From positions 62,001-126,000 of the IMG/VR virus record IMGVR_UViG_3300018962_000001: a stretch of DNA of 64,000 nucleotides; one strand, given 5' to 3'. A program made the translations under genes and the position numbers. Under the pieces are notes generated by a model, which made no database searches, had not been told where the DNA came from, and saw only the letters and a program-made list of their open reading frames with translations. Position 1 is the stretch's first letter; every line of letters begins with the position of its first letter. Below, in pieces: positions 44,067-44,200 of this stretch.

Positions 44067-44200
44067 GCGTCGCGCACCCTGACGGTTACTGCATACATTC
44101 ACGACTTTAACTCGTGTTCTAGGTTCGACTCCTAGCCCCTCCGCCTATGGAGGGGTTCCCAGTGGCGGGAGCTTTTGCAGTGAAAACTTGTGCGCGGCGC
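44067..44200 (+). ncRNA. handle RNA 3: permuted tRNA-like with TTA (ochre) anticodon
   Basis: AC arm CACGA-CTTTAAC-TCGTG, T arm, CCCCTCC-GCCTAT-GGAGGGG, then D arm; 11-bp outer stem. Confidence 0.75.

What the first reader, a model, noticed from the sequence alone, without database searches (positions are those of the whole stretch)
44067..44200. Permuted tRNA-like RNA with an ochre-suppressor (TTA) anticodon
Seen: loop CT-TTA-AC on a 5-bp stem, canonical T arm, and a perfect 7-bp acceptor closed by a 6-nt GCCTAT loop, with the D arm downstream. The body resembles tRNA-Gln (CTTTGAC to CTTTAAC). Many genes here end in TAA, so genome-wide recoding is unlikely. Inference: a conditionally matured suppressor, or a decoy for anticodon nucleases or release-factor-linked defence.
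Basis: partly seen in the sequence, partly recalled or inferred. Interest (0 to 1): 0.7.

Follow-up and report, generated by a model that had tools for sequence, protein, structure and literature searches.

The report
Phage Y-RNA-like permuted tRNA mimic
The "permuted suppressor tRNA" is real as a structure, but it is best read as one of about nine small RNAs in this giant phage that carry a tRNA look-alike on a conserved stem and sit beside a very divergent Ro60-type RNA-binding protein, a pairing also found in over 500 bacterial species. It is probably not a decoding tRNA.

Summary
Window 44067-44200 folds into a long terminal stem (P1, P2) carrying an anticodon-like hairpin (loop CUUUAAC), a canonical T arm, a 7-bp acceptor hairpin closed by GCCUAU and a short D arm (MFE z -4.97). 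ARAGORN calls tRNA-Stop(tta) after manual permutation.

The suppressor reading is not supported. The same stem scaffold (CCNRAC, NUACA, ACUUG motifs) recurs about nine times in the window, carrying different tRNA-like inserts.

It also lies next to homologues of window ORF 39512-41089 in bacteria of several phyla and in five other large viral contigs. A covariance model built only from eight bacterial copies finds the element at exactly 44067-44200 (76.6 bits, E 6e-15). Across 150 copies, 92.7% of cells pair, against 68% after shuffling.

The ORF has no Pfam hit, but its AlphaFold model matches Ro60/Rsr over its full length (Foldseek E 1e-10). It heads a conserved operon: small protein ending in Gly, Ro60-like, 289-aa protein, JAB, ThiF.

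The element therefore works like a YrlA-type Y RNA, a circularly permuted tRNA mimic. It fails the YrlA sequence tests. The anticodon-like triplet differs among homologues and the variable loop is only 2-3 nt. RNA-protein binding and function are inferred, not shown.

The parts
44067..44200 (+). E3, the element of the finding: a complete Y-RNA-like transcript unit from P1 to P1'
   Evidence: MFE structure, z -4.97. Model R1, built without it, matches 44067-44200 over its full length at 76.6 bits, E 6e-15.
44067..44077 (+). P1 5' strand; pairs with 44190-44200
   Evidence: 10 of the 11 P1 pairs show changes on both sides across 150 family members.
44078..44085 (+). Internal-loop 5' strand CCUGACGG, carrying the family motif CCNRAC
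   Evidence: Family alignments.
44086..44093 (+). P2 5' strand; pairs with 44176-44183
44091..44098 (+). Conserved motif GCAUACAU (family consensus NUACA[A/C/U])
   Evidence: GCATACA occurs 21 times in the window against 6 expected. U28, A29, C30 and A31 are invariant in alignment A2.
44100..44116 (+). Anticodon-like hairpin CACGA-CUUUAAC-UCGUG (triplet UUA at 44107-44109)
   Evidence: The equivalent hairpin is variable in homologues.
44119..44135 (+). T arm with loop UUCGACU
44136..44155 (+). Acceptor-like 7-bp hairpin closed by GCCUAU (44143-44148)
   Evidence: 99 of 150 family members have a 7-bp hairpin at this place.
44158..44169 (+). D arm (3-bp stem, loop AGUGGC)
44186..44190 (+). Conserved 3'-strand motif ACUUG at the P1' junction
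   Evidence: Invariant in alignment A2; used in the scaffold scan.
43816..43945 (+). Paralogue E1: same scaffold carrying an unpermuted tRNA-like body. Its acceptor stem has only about 4 bp and its loop is AUUGAGA.
   Evidence: R1 47.2 bits. Rfam tRNA matches model positions 4-67 only. Scaffold scan.
43963..44039 (+). Paralogue E2: scaffold with only a short hairpin insert
   Evidence: Scaffold scan.
45508..45640 (+). Paralogue: scaffold around ARAGORN's 'tRNA-Arg(tct)'
   Evidence: R1 30.6 bits, full-length match.
45735..45865 (+). Paralogue: scaffold around ARAGORN's 'tRNA-Gly(tcc)'
   Evidence: R1 39.7 bits.
46200..46296 (+). Paralogue E5: scaffold with a T arm and an acceptor hairpin closed by UUCG
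   Evidence: R1 33 bits. Scaffold scan. Weak full-length Rfam YrlA match, 18.3 bits.
46309..46589 (+). Paralogue E6: large variant. The acceptor 3' strand is followed by ACCA and about 130 nt before the 5' strand and D arm.
   Evidence: Sequence. R1 gives a partial match at 26.7 bits.
46682..46905 (+). Paralogue E7: same order of arms as E3, with a 77-nt insert in the acceptor loop and the anticodon-like loop UUGAAAC
   Evidence: R1 77.5 bits, E 4e-15.
47530..47601 (+). Paralogue: minimal scaffold
   Evidence: R1 36.4 bits.
43786..43813 (+). Sigma-70-type promoter (TTGACA-16-TATACT) directly upstream of E1
39285..39512 (+). 75-aa protein ending ...RPEAVFG; candidate ubiquitin-like modifier
   Evidence: Homologue found in 55 of 85 loci. 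The role is inferred.
39512..41089 (+). Divergent Ro60-like protein: helical ring plus a VWA domain with a MIDAS motif
   Evidence: AF2 model pLDDT 87. The top 13 Foldseek PDB hits are all Ro60/Rsr, E 1e-10 to 5e-8, TM 0.55-0.65, over about 500 columns. No Pfam, NCBIfam, PHROG or PADLOC hit.
41086..41841 (+). VWA plus HTH protein
   Evidence: Pfam.
41845..42714 (+). Conserved 289-aa protein with OB-like beta domains and an invariant Cys252; function unknown
42644..43108 (+). JAB/MPN peptidase
   Evidence: Pfam PF14464; PADLOC JAB.
43130..43789 (+). ThiF/E1-type adenylyltransferase
   Evidence: Pfam PF00899; NCBIfam and PADLOC E1 models.

Best explanation
Window 44067-44200 is a non-decoding small RNA of the Y-RNA type. 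It is one of about nine paralogues clustered downstream of a phage operon that encodes a very divergent Ro60 homologue.

Its 5' and 3' ends pair into a long stem (P1, internal loop, P2) with conserved unpaired motifs (CCNRAC, NUACA, ACUUG). This stem is the likely docking site for the Ro60-like ring. The rest is a tRNA look-alike in circularly permuted order: anticodon-like hairpin, T arm, loop-closed acceptor, D arm. That part is the likely effector module, which presents a tRNA shape to tRNA-binding proteins or enzymes, as proposed for bacterial YrlA.

Shown here:
- the structure;
- its conservation and covariation;
- membership of a family of more than 200 copies;
- strict genomic linkage to the Ro60-like operon in several bacterial phyla and in phages;
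- the Ro60 fold of the protein.

Inferred:
- that the RNA binds that protein;
- that the tRNA-like part acts as a tether or bait;
- that in this phage the system serves tRNA quality control or counter-defence beside its tRNA array, RNA ligase and CCA-adding enzyme.

The UUA triplet is most likely incidental.
For: (1) Scaffold recurrence. A scan for the scaffold found exactly four instances in the 204-kb genome, all on the + strand within 2.5 kb, and none in shuffles. The same scan gave 107 hits in 85 Ro-like loci against 0 in five dinucleotide shuffles.

(2) Non-circular membership test. Model R1, built from eight bacterial RNAs without E3, matches 44067-44200 end to end at 76.6 bits, E 6e-15. 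It also finds seven further copies in the window. Across 81 loci plus the window it gives 217 hits at E<=1e-4, nearly all on the gene's strand.

(3) Covariation. 23 of 34 pairs are compensatory in the 9-sequence alignment. On 150 copies, 92.7% of cells pair against 68.0% after shuffling and 34-50% with the partner slid; the covariation score is 0.565 against 0.169, reached by 0 of 500 shuffles.

(4) Protein. ORF 39512-41089 has more than 900 homologues of about 500 aa and relatives in at least 532 species genomes. The AF2 model has pLDDT 87, and the top 13 PDB matches are all Ro60/Rsr, aligned over the full length. The MIDAS residues D342, S344, S346, T404 and D428 are invariant.

(5) Operon. 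The same gene order occurs in bacteria as in the phage.

(6) Phages. Five other large viral contigs carry the gene together with scaffold RNAs and tRNA clusters.

(7) Literature. [quoted passage not shown]
Against: - No binding or expression data exist. The only runs that hold the sequence are DNA metagenomes, and the complex prediction was not run for a protein-RNA pair.
- The stem lacks the GNCGAAN0-1G motif reported for YrlA.
- Rfam YrlA and Y_RNA do not score the element.
- The Ro60 assignment rests on a predicted structure at 13-15% identity.
- Unlike YrlA, E3 keeps a well-formed 5-bp, 7-nt anticodon-like hairpin with U33. Forty-one of 78 homologous hairpins also keep U33 and a purine at 37, which hints that the loop itself may matter.
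- The acceptor loop starts G-CC and ends in U. It could therefore be opened by RNase P, as shown for M. smegmatis YrlA.
Confidence: 0.72

Rival explanations
1. Conditionally matured ochre suppressor. The precursor is cut at the P2 junctions and its ends are ligated by the phage RNA ligase. The acceptor loop is opened by RNase P and 3' trimming, CCA is completed, and the product reads UAA.
For: After permutation, ARAGORN calls tRNA-Stop(tta). The phage encodes an Rnl-type RNA ligase (38507-39166) and a CCA-adding-type enzyme. The acceptor loop begins G-CC and has U at -1.
Against: - The variable region is only 2-3 nt and the D stem 3 bp.
- There is no tRNA splicing endonuclease or RtcB in the genome, and no bulge-helix-bulge at the junction.
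- The triplet is not conserved among family members.
- The same scaffold carries inserts that cannot become tRNAs, such as a bare hairpin or a T arm with a minihelix.
- TAA terminates 54 of 181 long ORFs.
Confidence: 0.04
2. Two-piece, CCA-ended tRNA-like RNA. RNase P cuts 5' of GGAGGGG and the 3' piece is trimmed and given CCA, as for M. smegmatis YrlA. The result is a nicked mimic held together by P1, P2 and the acceptor stem. It might be charged or bound by EF-Tu or synthetases, but it stays attached to the scaffold.
For: The acceptor stem has 7 bp, as in the RNase P-cleaved M. smegmatis YrlA (PMC4201824). The loop is G-CC-UAU. Paralogues at 46309-46589 and 46682-46905 encode ACCA or ACC after the acceptor 3' strand, followed by long inserts. 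Seven of 99 family acceptor loops begin NCCA and 17 begin NCC.
Against: Most family members have short closed loops without CCA. No processing data exist. This is a refinement of the best explanation rather than an alternative to it.
Confidence: 0.12
3. Free-standing decoy for host anticodon nucleases or other tRNA-targeting defences, acting without the Ro60-like protein.
For: The element is a full tRNA shape with an anticodon-like loop, at the head of a 36-tRNA array and near an RNA ligase. Different copies present different loops.
Against: The conserved stem and its motifs would have no role in this model. The RNAs are just as tightly linked to the Ro60-like operon in cellular genomes that have no phage context.
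Confidence: 0.08
4. Decayed or rearranged tRNA pseudogene with no function.
For: The D arm and variable region are degenerate.
Against: The fold is far more stable than shuffles, the element matches the bacterial model over its full length, and family-wide covariation is strong.
Confidence: 0.02

Closest known systems
YrlA (Y RNA-like A), the bacterial and phage Y RNAs bound by Ro60/Rsr (Rfam RF02553; Chen et al. 2014, PMC4201824; YrlA structure preprint 10.1101/312249)
   Same: Both have a terminal stem formed by the 5' and 3' ends and a tRNA-like module in permuted order, with a T arm, a loop-closed acceptor-like stem and a D arm. Both occur as several paralogues side by side, next to a Ro60-type gene, in phages as well as bacteria, and sometimes near RNA ligases.
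   Different: The partner protein is a separate, very divergent Ro60 clade that Pfam TROVE does not detect, and it sits in an operon with a small Gly-ended protein, JAB and ThiF. The stem motifs are CCNRAC, NUACA and ACUUG rather than GNCGAAN0-1G. The Rfam model does not score E3. E3 keeps a complete anticodon-like stem-loop, which YrlA lacks. The stem joins the mimic at different places in different copies: the acceptor end, the variable region, the D/anticodon junction or the anticodon loop.
Metazoan and Deinococcus Y RNAs (Rfam Y_RNA RF00019)
   Same: The architecture is the same: a long stem with a bulged or internal-loop protein-binding site, plus a variable effector module. The 3' strand ACUUG and the 5' strand CCGA-like letters recall UUGACC and GGUCCGA; this comparison is from memory and from PMC4201824 and is only a lead.
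   Different: No Rfam Y_RNA match appeared at E<=10. Those RNAs do not carry a tRNA-like module of this completeness.
Permuted tRNA genes of Cyanidioschyzon merolae and Thermofilum (from my own knowledge of the literature)
   Same: The 3' half lies upstream of the 5' half, with the acceptor ends joined by a short linker.
   Different: Those genes are matured through a bulge-helix-bulge motif by the splicing endonuclease and a ligase into functional tRNAs. Here there is no such motif or enzyme, and the element is bacterial-phage encoded and embedded in a conserved protein-linked scaffold.
Phage suppressor tRNAs linked to stop-codon recoding (for example bioRxiv 10.1101/2021.08.26.457843)
   Same: The anticodon triplet is complementary to a stop codon, and the element sits in a phage tRNA cluster.
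   Different: Those are contiguous, canonical tRNAs in genomes that show in-frame recoded stops. This genome uses TGA, TAA and TAG as stops, and the element is not a contiguous tRNA.

Membership tests
Scaffolded tRNA-mimic RNAs linked to the divergent Ro60-like gene (family defined here) | Full-length match to a covariance model built from other members only | tested here: met
   R1, built from eight bacterial RNAs, matches 44067-44200 at 76.6 bits, E 6e-15, over model positions 1-147.
Scaffolded tRNA-mimic RNAs linked to the divergent Ro60-like gene (family defined here) | P1 and P2 stems flanking the motifs CCNRAC, NUACA and ACUUG | tested here: met
Scaffolded tRNA-mimic RNAs linked to the divergent Ro60-like gene (family defined here) | Encoded on the same strand within a few kb of the Ro60-like operon | tested here: met
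   E3 starts 278 nt after the last operon gene (ThiF ends at 43789). The linkage is seen in 55 or more of 85 loci.
YrlA (Rfam RF02553) | Rfam covariance model score at or above the gathering score of 69 bits | tested here: not met
   No match to E3 at E<=10. The best scaffold-RNA match in the window is 18.3 bits, at 46202-46297. Bacterial family members also give no match at gathering level.
YrlA (Rfam RF02553) | GNCGAAN0-1G motif near the 5' end (PMC4201824) | tested here: not met
   The 5' part reads GCGUCGCGCACCCUGACGG. The family consensus is CCNRAC.
YrlA (Rfam RF02553) | Permuted tRNA-like domain: T arm, loop-closed acceptor-like stem, D arm | tested here: met
YrlA (Rfam RF02553) | Encoded next to a Ro60/Rsr orthologue | tested here: inconclusive
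   The neighbour has the Ro60 fold by Foldseek, but Pfam TROVE misses it.
YrlA (Rfam RF02553) | Bound by Ro60/Rsr in vivo; modified by TruB and DusA | not testable with these tools
   Needs immunoprecipitation and modification mapping.
Functional (suppressor) tRNA | Contiguous cloverleaf recognised by tRNA finders | tested here: not met
   Neither ARAGORN nor Rfam tRNA calls anything at 44067-44200. A call appears only after manual permutation.
Functional (suppressor) tRNA | Free acceptor ends, a 4-5-nt or long variable region and a normal D stem | tested here: not met
   The acceptor is closed by GCCUAU, the variable region is UU(C), and the D stem has 3 bp.
Functional (suppressor) tRNA | Anticodon conserved among homologues | tested here: not met
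   There are more than 40 different triplets among 78 homologous hairpins, with UUA only in E3. Some loops have 6 nt and some hairpins are absent.
Functional (suppressor) tRNA | Aminoacylation and UAA readthrough | not testable with these tools
   Needs tRNA sequencing, acid gels and a reporter assay.
Permuted tRNA genes matured by the splicing endonuclease | Bulge-helix-bulge motif at the junction of leader and trailer | tested here: not met
   The junction is an 8-bp helix flanked by loops of 6 and 3 nt on the insert side and 8 and 6 nt on the P1 side.
Permuted tRNA genes matured by the splicing endonuclease | Splicing endonuclease and RtcB available | tested here: not met
   There are no PF01974 or PF01139 matches in the phage genome. 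The host is unknown.
Ro60/TROVE proteins (for ORF 39512-41089) | Pfam TROVE (PF05731) match | tested here: not met
   The model also misses the homologues in five bacterial genomes.
Ro60/TROVE proteins (for ORF 39512-41089) | Helical-repeat ring followed by a VWA domain with MIDAS; full-length structural match to solved Ro60 | tested here: met
   The top 13 PDB hits are Ro60/Rsr, TM 0.55-0.65. The DxSxS...T...D residues are invariant.

The most novel reading that the evidence does not exclude
The element belongs to an undescribed ribonucleoprotein system. In it, a Ro60-like ring is genetically coupled to a ubiquitin-like conjugation set (a small Gly-ended protein, a ThiF-type E1 and a JAB peptidase). 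The system uses a panel of scaffolded, near-complete tRNA mimics with anticodon arms of many 'identities' as baits or sensors for proteins that attack or handle tRNA. It is present in more than 500 bacterial species and has been taken up repeatedly by giant phages next to their tRNA arrays. In this reading, the UUA-loop copy would be a bait for a factor that recognises that loop.
Probability: 0.2. Interest if true: 0.85.

Novelty: new variant of a known kind. Interest (0 to 1): 0.62.

Why it matters
For genome annotation: three of the window's 36 'tRNAs' and several unannotated stretches are Y-RNA-like mimics, not decoders. A stop-complementary triplet in such an element should not be read as evidence of recoding.

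For RNA biology: the work links a previously unannotated protein family (about 500 aa, no Pfam, NCBIfam, PHROG or PADLOC model, in at least 532 species) to the Ro60 fold. It also links that family to more than 200 neighbouring structured RNAs, which widens the known range of Ro60/Y-RNA systems.

The link also ties these systems to ubiquitin-like conjugation genes and to phage tRNA arrays. The function of tRNA mimicry by Y RNAs is an open question. A system with many mimic topologies, and with phage-borne copies, offers new material for testing it.

Tried and rejected
- **Self-cleaving ribozyme or bulge-helix-bulge processing signal.** I first took the flanking motifs for one of these. No Rfam ribozyme or other family matched, at gathering level or at E<=10, and the loop geometry does not fit.
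- **Exact pattern scan of viral contigs for GCATACA...GGTTCGANTCC...AACTTG.** This gave only ordinary tRNAs by chance.
- **Single-sequence searches of viral contigs** with the ThiF and Ro-like proteins found nothing. The alignment-based search worked.
- **Similarity search against phage records.** Only a 56-nt tRNA-like match to Erwinia phages appeared, so no sequenced relative is known.
- **Sequence search of the Ro-like protein against PDB chains.** Only noise came back; the fold search was needed.
- **Complex prediction of the protein with the RNA.** The job was not folded, so it gives no evidence either way.
- **Sequencing runs.** Only DNA biocrust metagenomes hold the region and no RNA run does.
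- **The 289-aa operon protein.** The model is good, but no convincing known fold matched beyond OB-like domains.
- **tmRNA-like reading of 46363-46480.** This rests only on a 13.5-bit Rfam match, and ARAGORN finds no tmRNA.
- **Origin of E3 from a particular phage tRNA.** No tRNA stands out.

Full report
**Setting.** The window is bases 62001-126000 of a single 204,685-bp viral contig (60.8% G+C, rated complete) from a biocrust metagenome. The coding ORFs examined here all lie on the + strand. ARAGORN finds 36 tRNAs, 35 of them between 43.8 and 60.4 kb. No close relative is present among sequenced phages.

**The observation.**
- CACGA-CUUUAAC-UCGUG, with the triplet UUA at 44107-44109;
- the T arm CUAGG-UUCGACU-CCUAG;
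- a perfect 7-bp acceptor CCCCUCC/GGAGGGG closed by GCCUAU;
- a short D arm CCC-AGUGGC-GGG.

tRNA finders do not call the element in native order. ARAGORN calls tRNA-Stop(tta) once the 5' half is placed first. The whole 134-nt stretch folds into these four hairpins, enclosed by an 11-bp and an 8-bp stem. The energy is -61.5 kcal/mol against -42.5 for shuffles (z -4.97).

The tRNA-like body is nevertheless degenerate. Only 2-3 nt separate the anticodon-like and T stems, and the D stem has 3 bp. No phage tRNA stands out as its source, and tRNA-Gln is not among its eight closest.

The element is bracketed by two stems and three unpaired motifs: CCUGAC after P1, GCAUACAU after P2, and AAACUUG before P1'. 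GCATACA is over-represented in the window (21 occurrences against 6 expected). A scan requiring the motifs plus perfect 6-bp P1 and P2 finds exactly four instances in the whole genome. All four are on the + strand between 43.8 and 46.3 kb, and shuffles give none. P1 and P2 differ in sequence but stay paired among the four. The inserts differ:
- an unpermuted tRNA-like body with a truncated acceptor (43816-43945);
- a bare hairpin (43963-44039);
- the permuted body of the finding;
- a T arm plus minihelix (46200-46296).

**The neighbouring protein.** Just upstream lies an operon:
- a 75-aa protein ending ...VFG;
- a 525-aa ORF (39512-41089);
- a VWA-HTH protein;
- a 289-aa protein;
- a JAB peptidase;
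- a ThiF-type E1.

The 525-aa ORF has no Pfam, PHROG, NCBIfam or PADLOC match, and the genome has no Pfam TROVE match. It does have more than 900 homologues at 50-59% identity, and relatives in at least 532 species genomes of Chloroflexota, Planctomycetota, Abditibacteriota, Cyanobacteriota and others.

Its AlphaFold model (pLDDT 87, pTM 0.81) matches solved Ro60/Rsr structures over its full length. The top 13 Foldseek PDB hits are all Ro60 (frog, human, Deinococcus Rsr, Thermus phage phiLo), with E 1e-10 to 5e-8 and TM 0.55-0.65. The C-terminal domain keeps an invariant MIDAS motif. The same operon order is conserved in bacteria. In five bacterial genomes carrying the gene, Pfam TROVE misses it. 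Four of those genomes have no canonical Ro60 at all.

**The RNA family.** The bacterial loci carry the same scaffold RNAs, usually just upstream of the Ro60-like gene or just after the operon and on the same strand. E3 aligns collinearly with eight bacterial copies. RNAalifold recovers P1, P2, the T arm, the 7-bp acceptor hairpin and the D arm, with compensatory changes in 23 of 34 pairs.

A covariance model built from the eight bacterial copies alone finds E3 at exactly 44067-44200 (76.6 bits, E 6e-15). It also finds seven more copies in the window, two of which enclose ARAGORN's 'tRNA-Arg(tct)' and 'tRNA-Gly(tcc)'. Over 81 loci plus the window it gives 217 matches at E<=1e-4.

On 150 aligned copies, 92.7% of cells pair, against 68.0% after shuffling and 34-50% with slid partners. 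The covariation score is 0.565 against 0.169. That alignment was fitted to the model, so these figures lean towards the structure. Five other large viral contigs carry the gene, the scaffold RNAs and tRNA clusters. No Rfam family matches the scaffold.

**What the inserts say about decoding.** The stem joins the tRNA-like body at different points in different copies: the acceptor end, the variable region, the D/anticodon junction (as in E3) or the anticodon loop (as in YrlA). Some inserts are too small ever to be tRNAs.

Among 78 copies with a hairpin before the T arm, the loop triplet takes more than 40 values, with UUA only in E3. Forty-one of the 78 keep U33 and a purine at 37. Other copies have loops of a different length or no hairpin at all. 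UUA-type loops also occur in a few Microcoleus copies whose close relatives carry CUU or UUU.

Ninety-nine of 150 copies have a 7-bp acceptor hairpin. Its loop has a median of 7 nt and begins NCCA in only 7 cases.

The phage lacks a tRNA splicing endonuclease and RtcB. It uses TGA, TAA and TAG as stops in 94, 54 and 33 of 181 long ORFs. Together these results argue against a matured ochre suppressor.

**Comparison with what is known.** Published work describes YrlA RNAs as Y RNAs whose effector module is a circularly permuted tRNA mimic with a loop-closed acceptor stem. They are encoded beside Ro60 in more than 250 bacteria and phages, occasionally beside RNA ligases. The M. smegmatis copy, with a 7-bp stem, is cut by RNase P and receives CCA (PMC4201824; bioRxiv 10.1101/312249).

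E3 works like such an RNA but fails the sequence tests for membership. It has no Rfam YrlA hit and no GNCGAA motif, and it keeps an anticodon-like arm that YrlA lacks. The partner protein is a distinct, much more divergent Ro60 clade in an operon with ubiquitin-like conjugation genes.

I found no description of this combination in the searchable literature. The most relevant comparative paper (Burroughs and Aravind 2016) could not be opened, so prior description cannot be excluded.

**Mechanism and limits.** The best-supported model has three parts. The terminal stem docks on the Ro60-like ring. The tRNA-like module presents a tRNA shape to another factor. In the phage, the system acts beside the tRNA array, the RNA ligase (38507-39166) and the CCA-adding enzyme (11915-13393), in tRNA surveillance or counter-defence.

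Structure, family membership, linkage and the protein fold are shown. Binding, processing and biological role are inferred. RNase P opening of the acceptor loop (G-CC...U|G) is a plausible refinement.

The placement of the phage protein within a Chloroflexota/Abditibacteriota clade is tentative because of its long branch.

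Noticed in passing
window 43840-43910, 45538-45612, 45765-45836: Three of ARAGORN's 36 tRNA calls (Ser-tga, Arg-tct, Gly-tcc) lie inside Y-like scaffolds. They are probably mimic modules rather than ordinary tRNA genes. The first lacks the top of the acceptor stem and has no long variable arm despite its 'Ser' triplet.
   Followed up: partly
window 46309-46589 and 46682-46905: Two scaffold RNAs have large inserts (about 130 and 77 nt) where the others have a short acceptor loop. The acceptor 3' strand is followed by ACCA and ACC respectively, which hints that some copies are opened and end in CCA.
   Followed up: partly
window 44268-45028: A strong sigma-70-type promoter (TTGACA-17-TATGAT, 44268-44296) is followed by about 700 nt with no tRNA or scaffold match. 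The stretch contains a long hairpin at 44541-44674 (a spurious microRNA hit of 33 bits) and two overlapping ORFs of 90 and 119 aa. It is unexplained.
   Followed up: no
window 39285-39512: A 75-aa ORF ends in ...TVRPEAVFG, and the ending is conserved in bacterial homologues upstream of the Ro60-like gene. It is a candidate ubiquitin-like modifier for the ThiF/JAB pair, and no family model exists for it.
   Followed up: partly
window 41845-42714: A conserved 289-aa operon protein gives a confident model of OB-like beta domains and has an invariant cysteine (C252). No convincing match to a solved structure was found.
   Followed up: partly
window 11915-13393; 32920-34383; 38507-39166: The phage encodes a CCA-adding-type nucleotidyltransferase, a WGR-domain ATP-dependent DNA ligase and an Rnl-type RNA ligase. 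It has no RtcB and no tRNA splicing endonuclease.
   Followed up: partly
L088:1-4800 (Phormidium sp. CCY1219): A cellular locus has about 13 tRNA genes in an array directly upstream of the small Gly-ended protein gene, four scaffold RNAs and the Ro60-like gene. The link to tRNA arrays is therefore not confined to phages.
   Followed up: no
L100-L104 (IMG/VR contigs of 37-390 kb): Five other viral contigs carry the Ro60-like gene with scaffold RNAs and tRNA clusters. In the protein tree they fall in at least two places apart from this phage, which suggests repeated capture.
   Followed up: partly
L094:4790-4932: A Planctomycetota copy has the same anticodon-like stem as E3 (CACGA/UCGUG) but the loop CUUCUAA. 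E3's CUUUAAC could derive from such a loop by a one-base shift.
   Followed up: no
acceptor loops of family members, e.g. L017:7650-7797, L063:4713-4863, L066:1003-1152: Many Planctomycetota and Chloroflexota copies share an acceptor-loop motif of the form A(C/U)U(C/U)(U)AC, which may be a recognition element.
   Followed up: no
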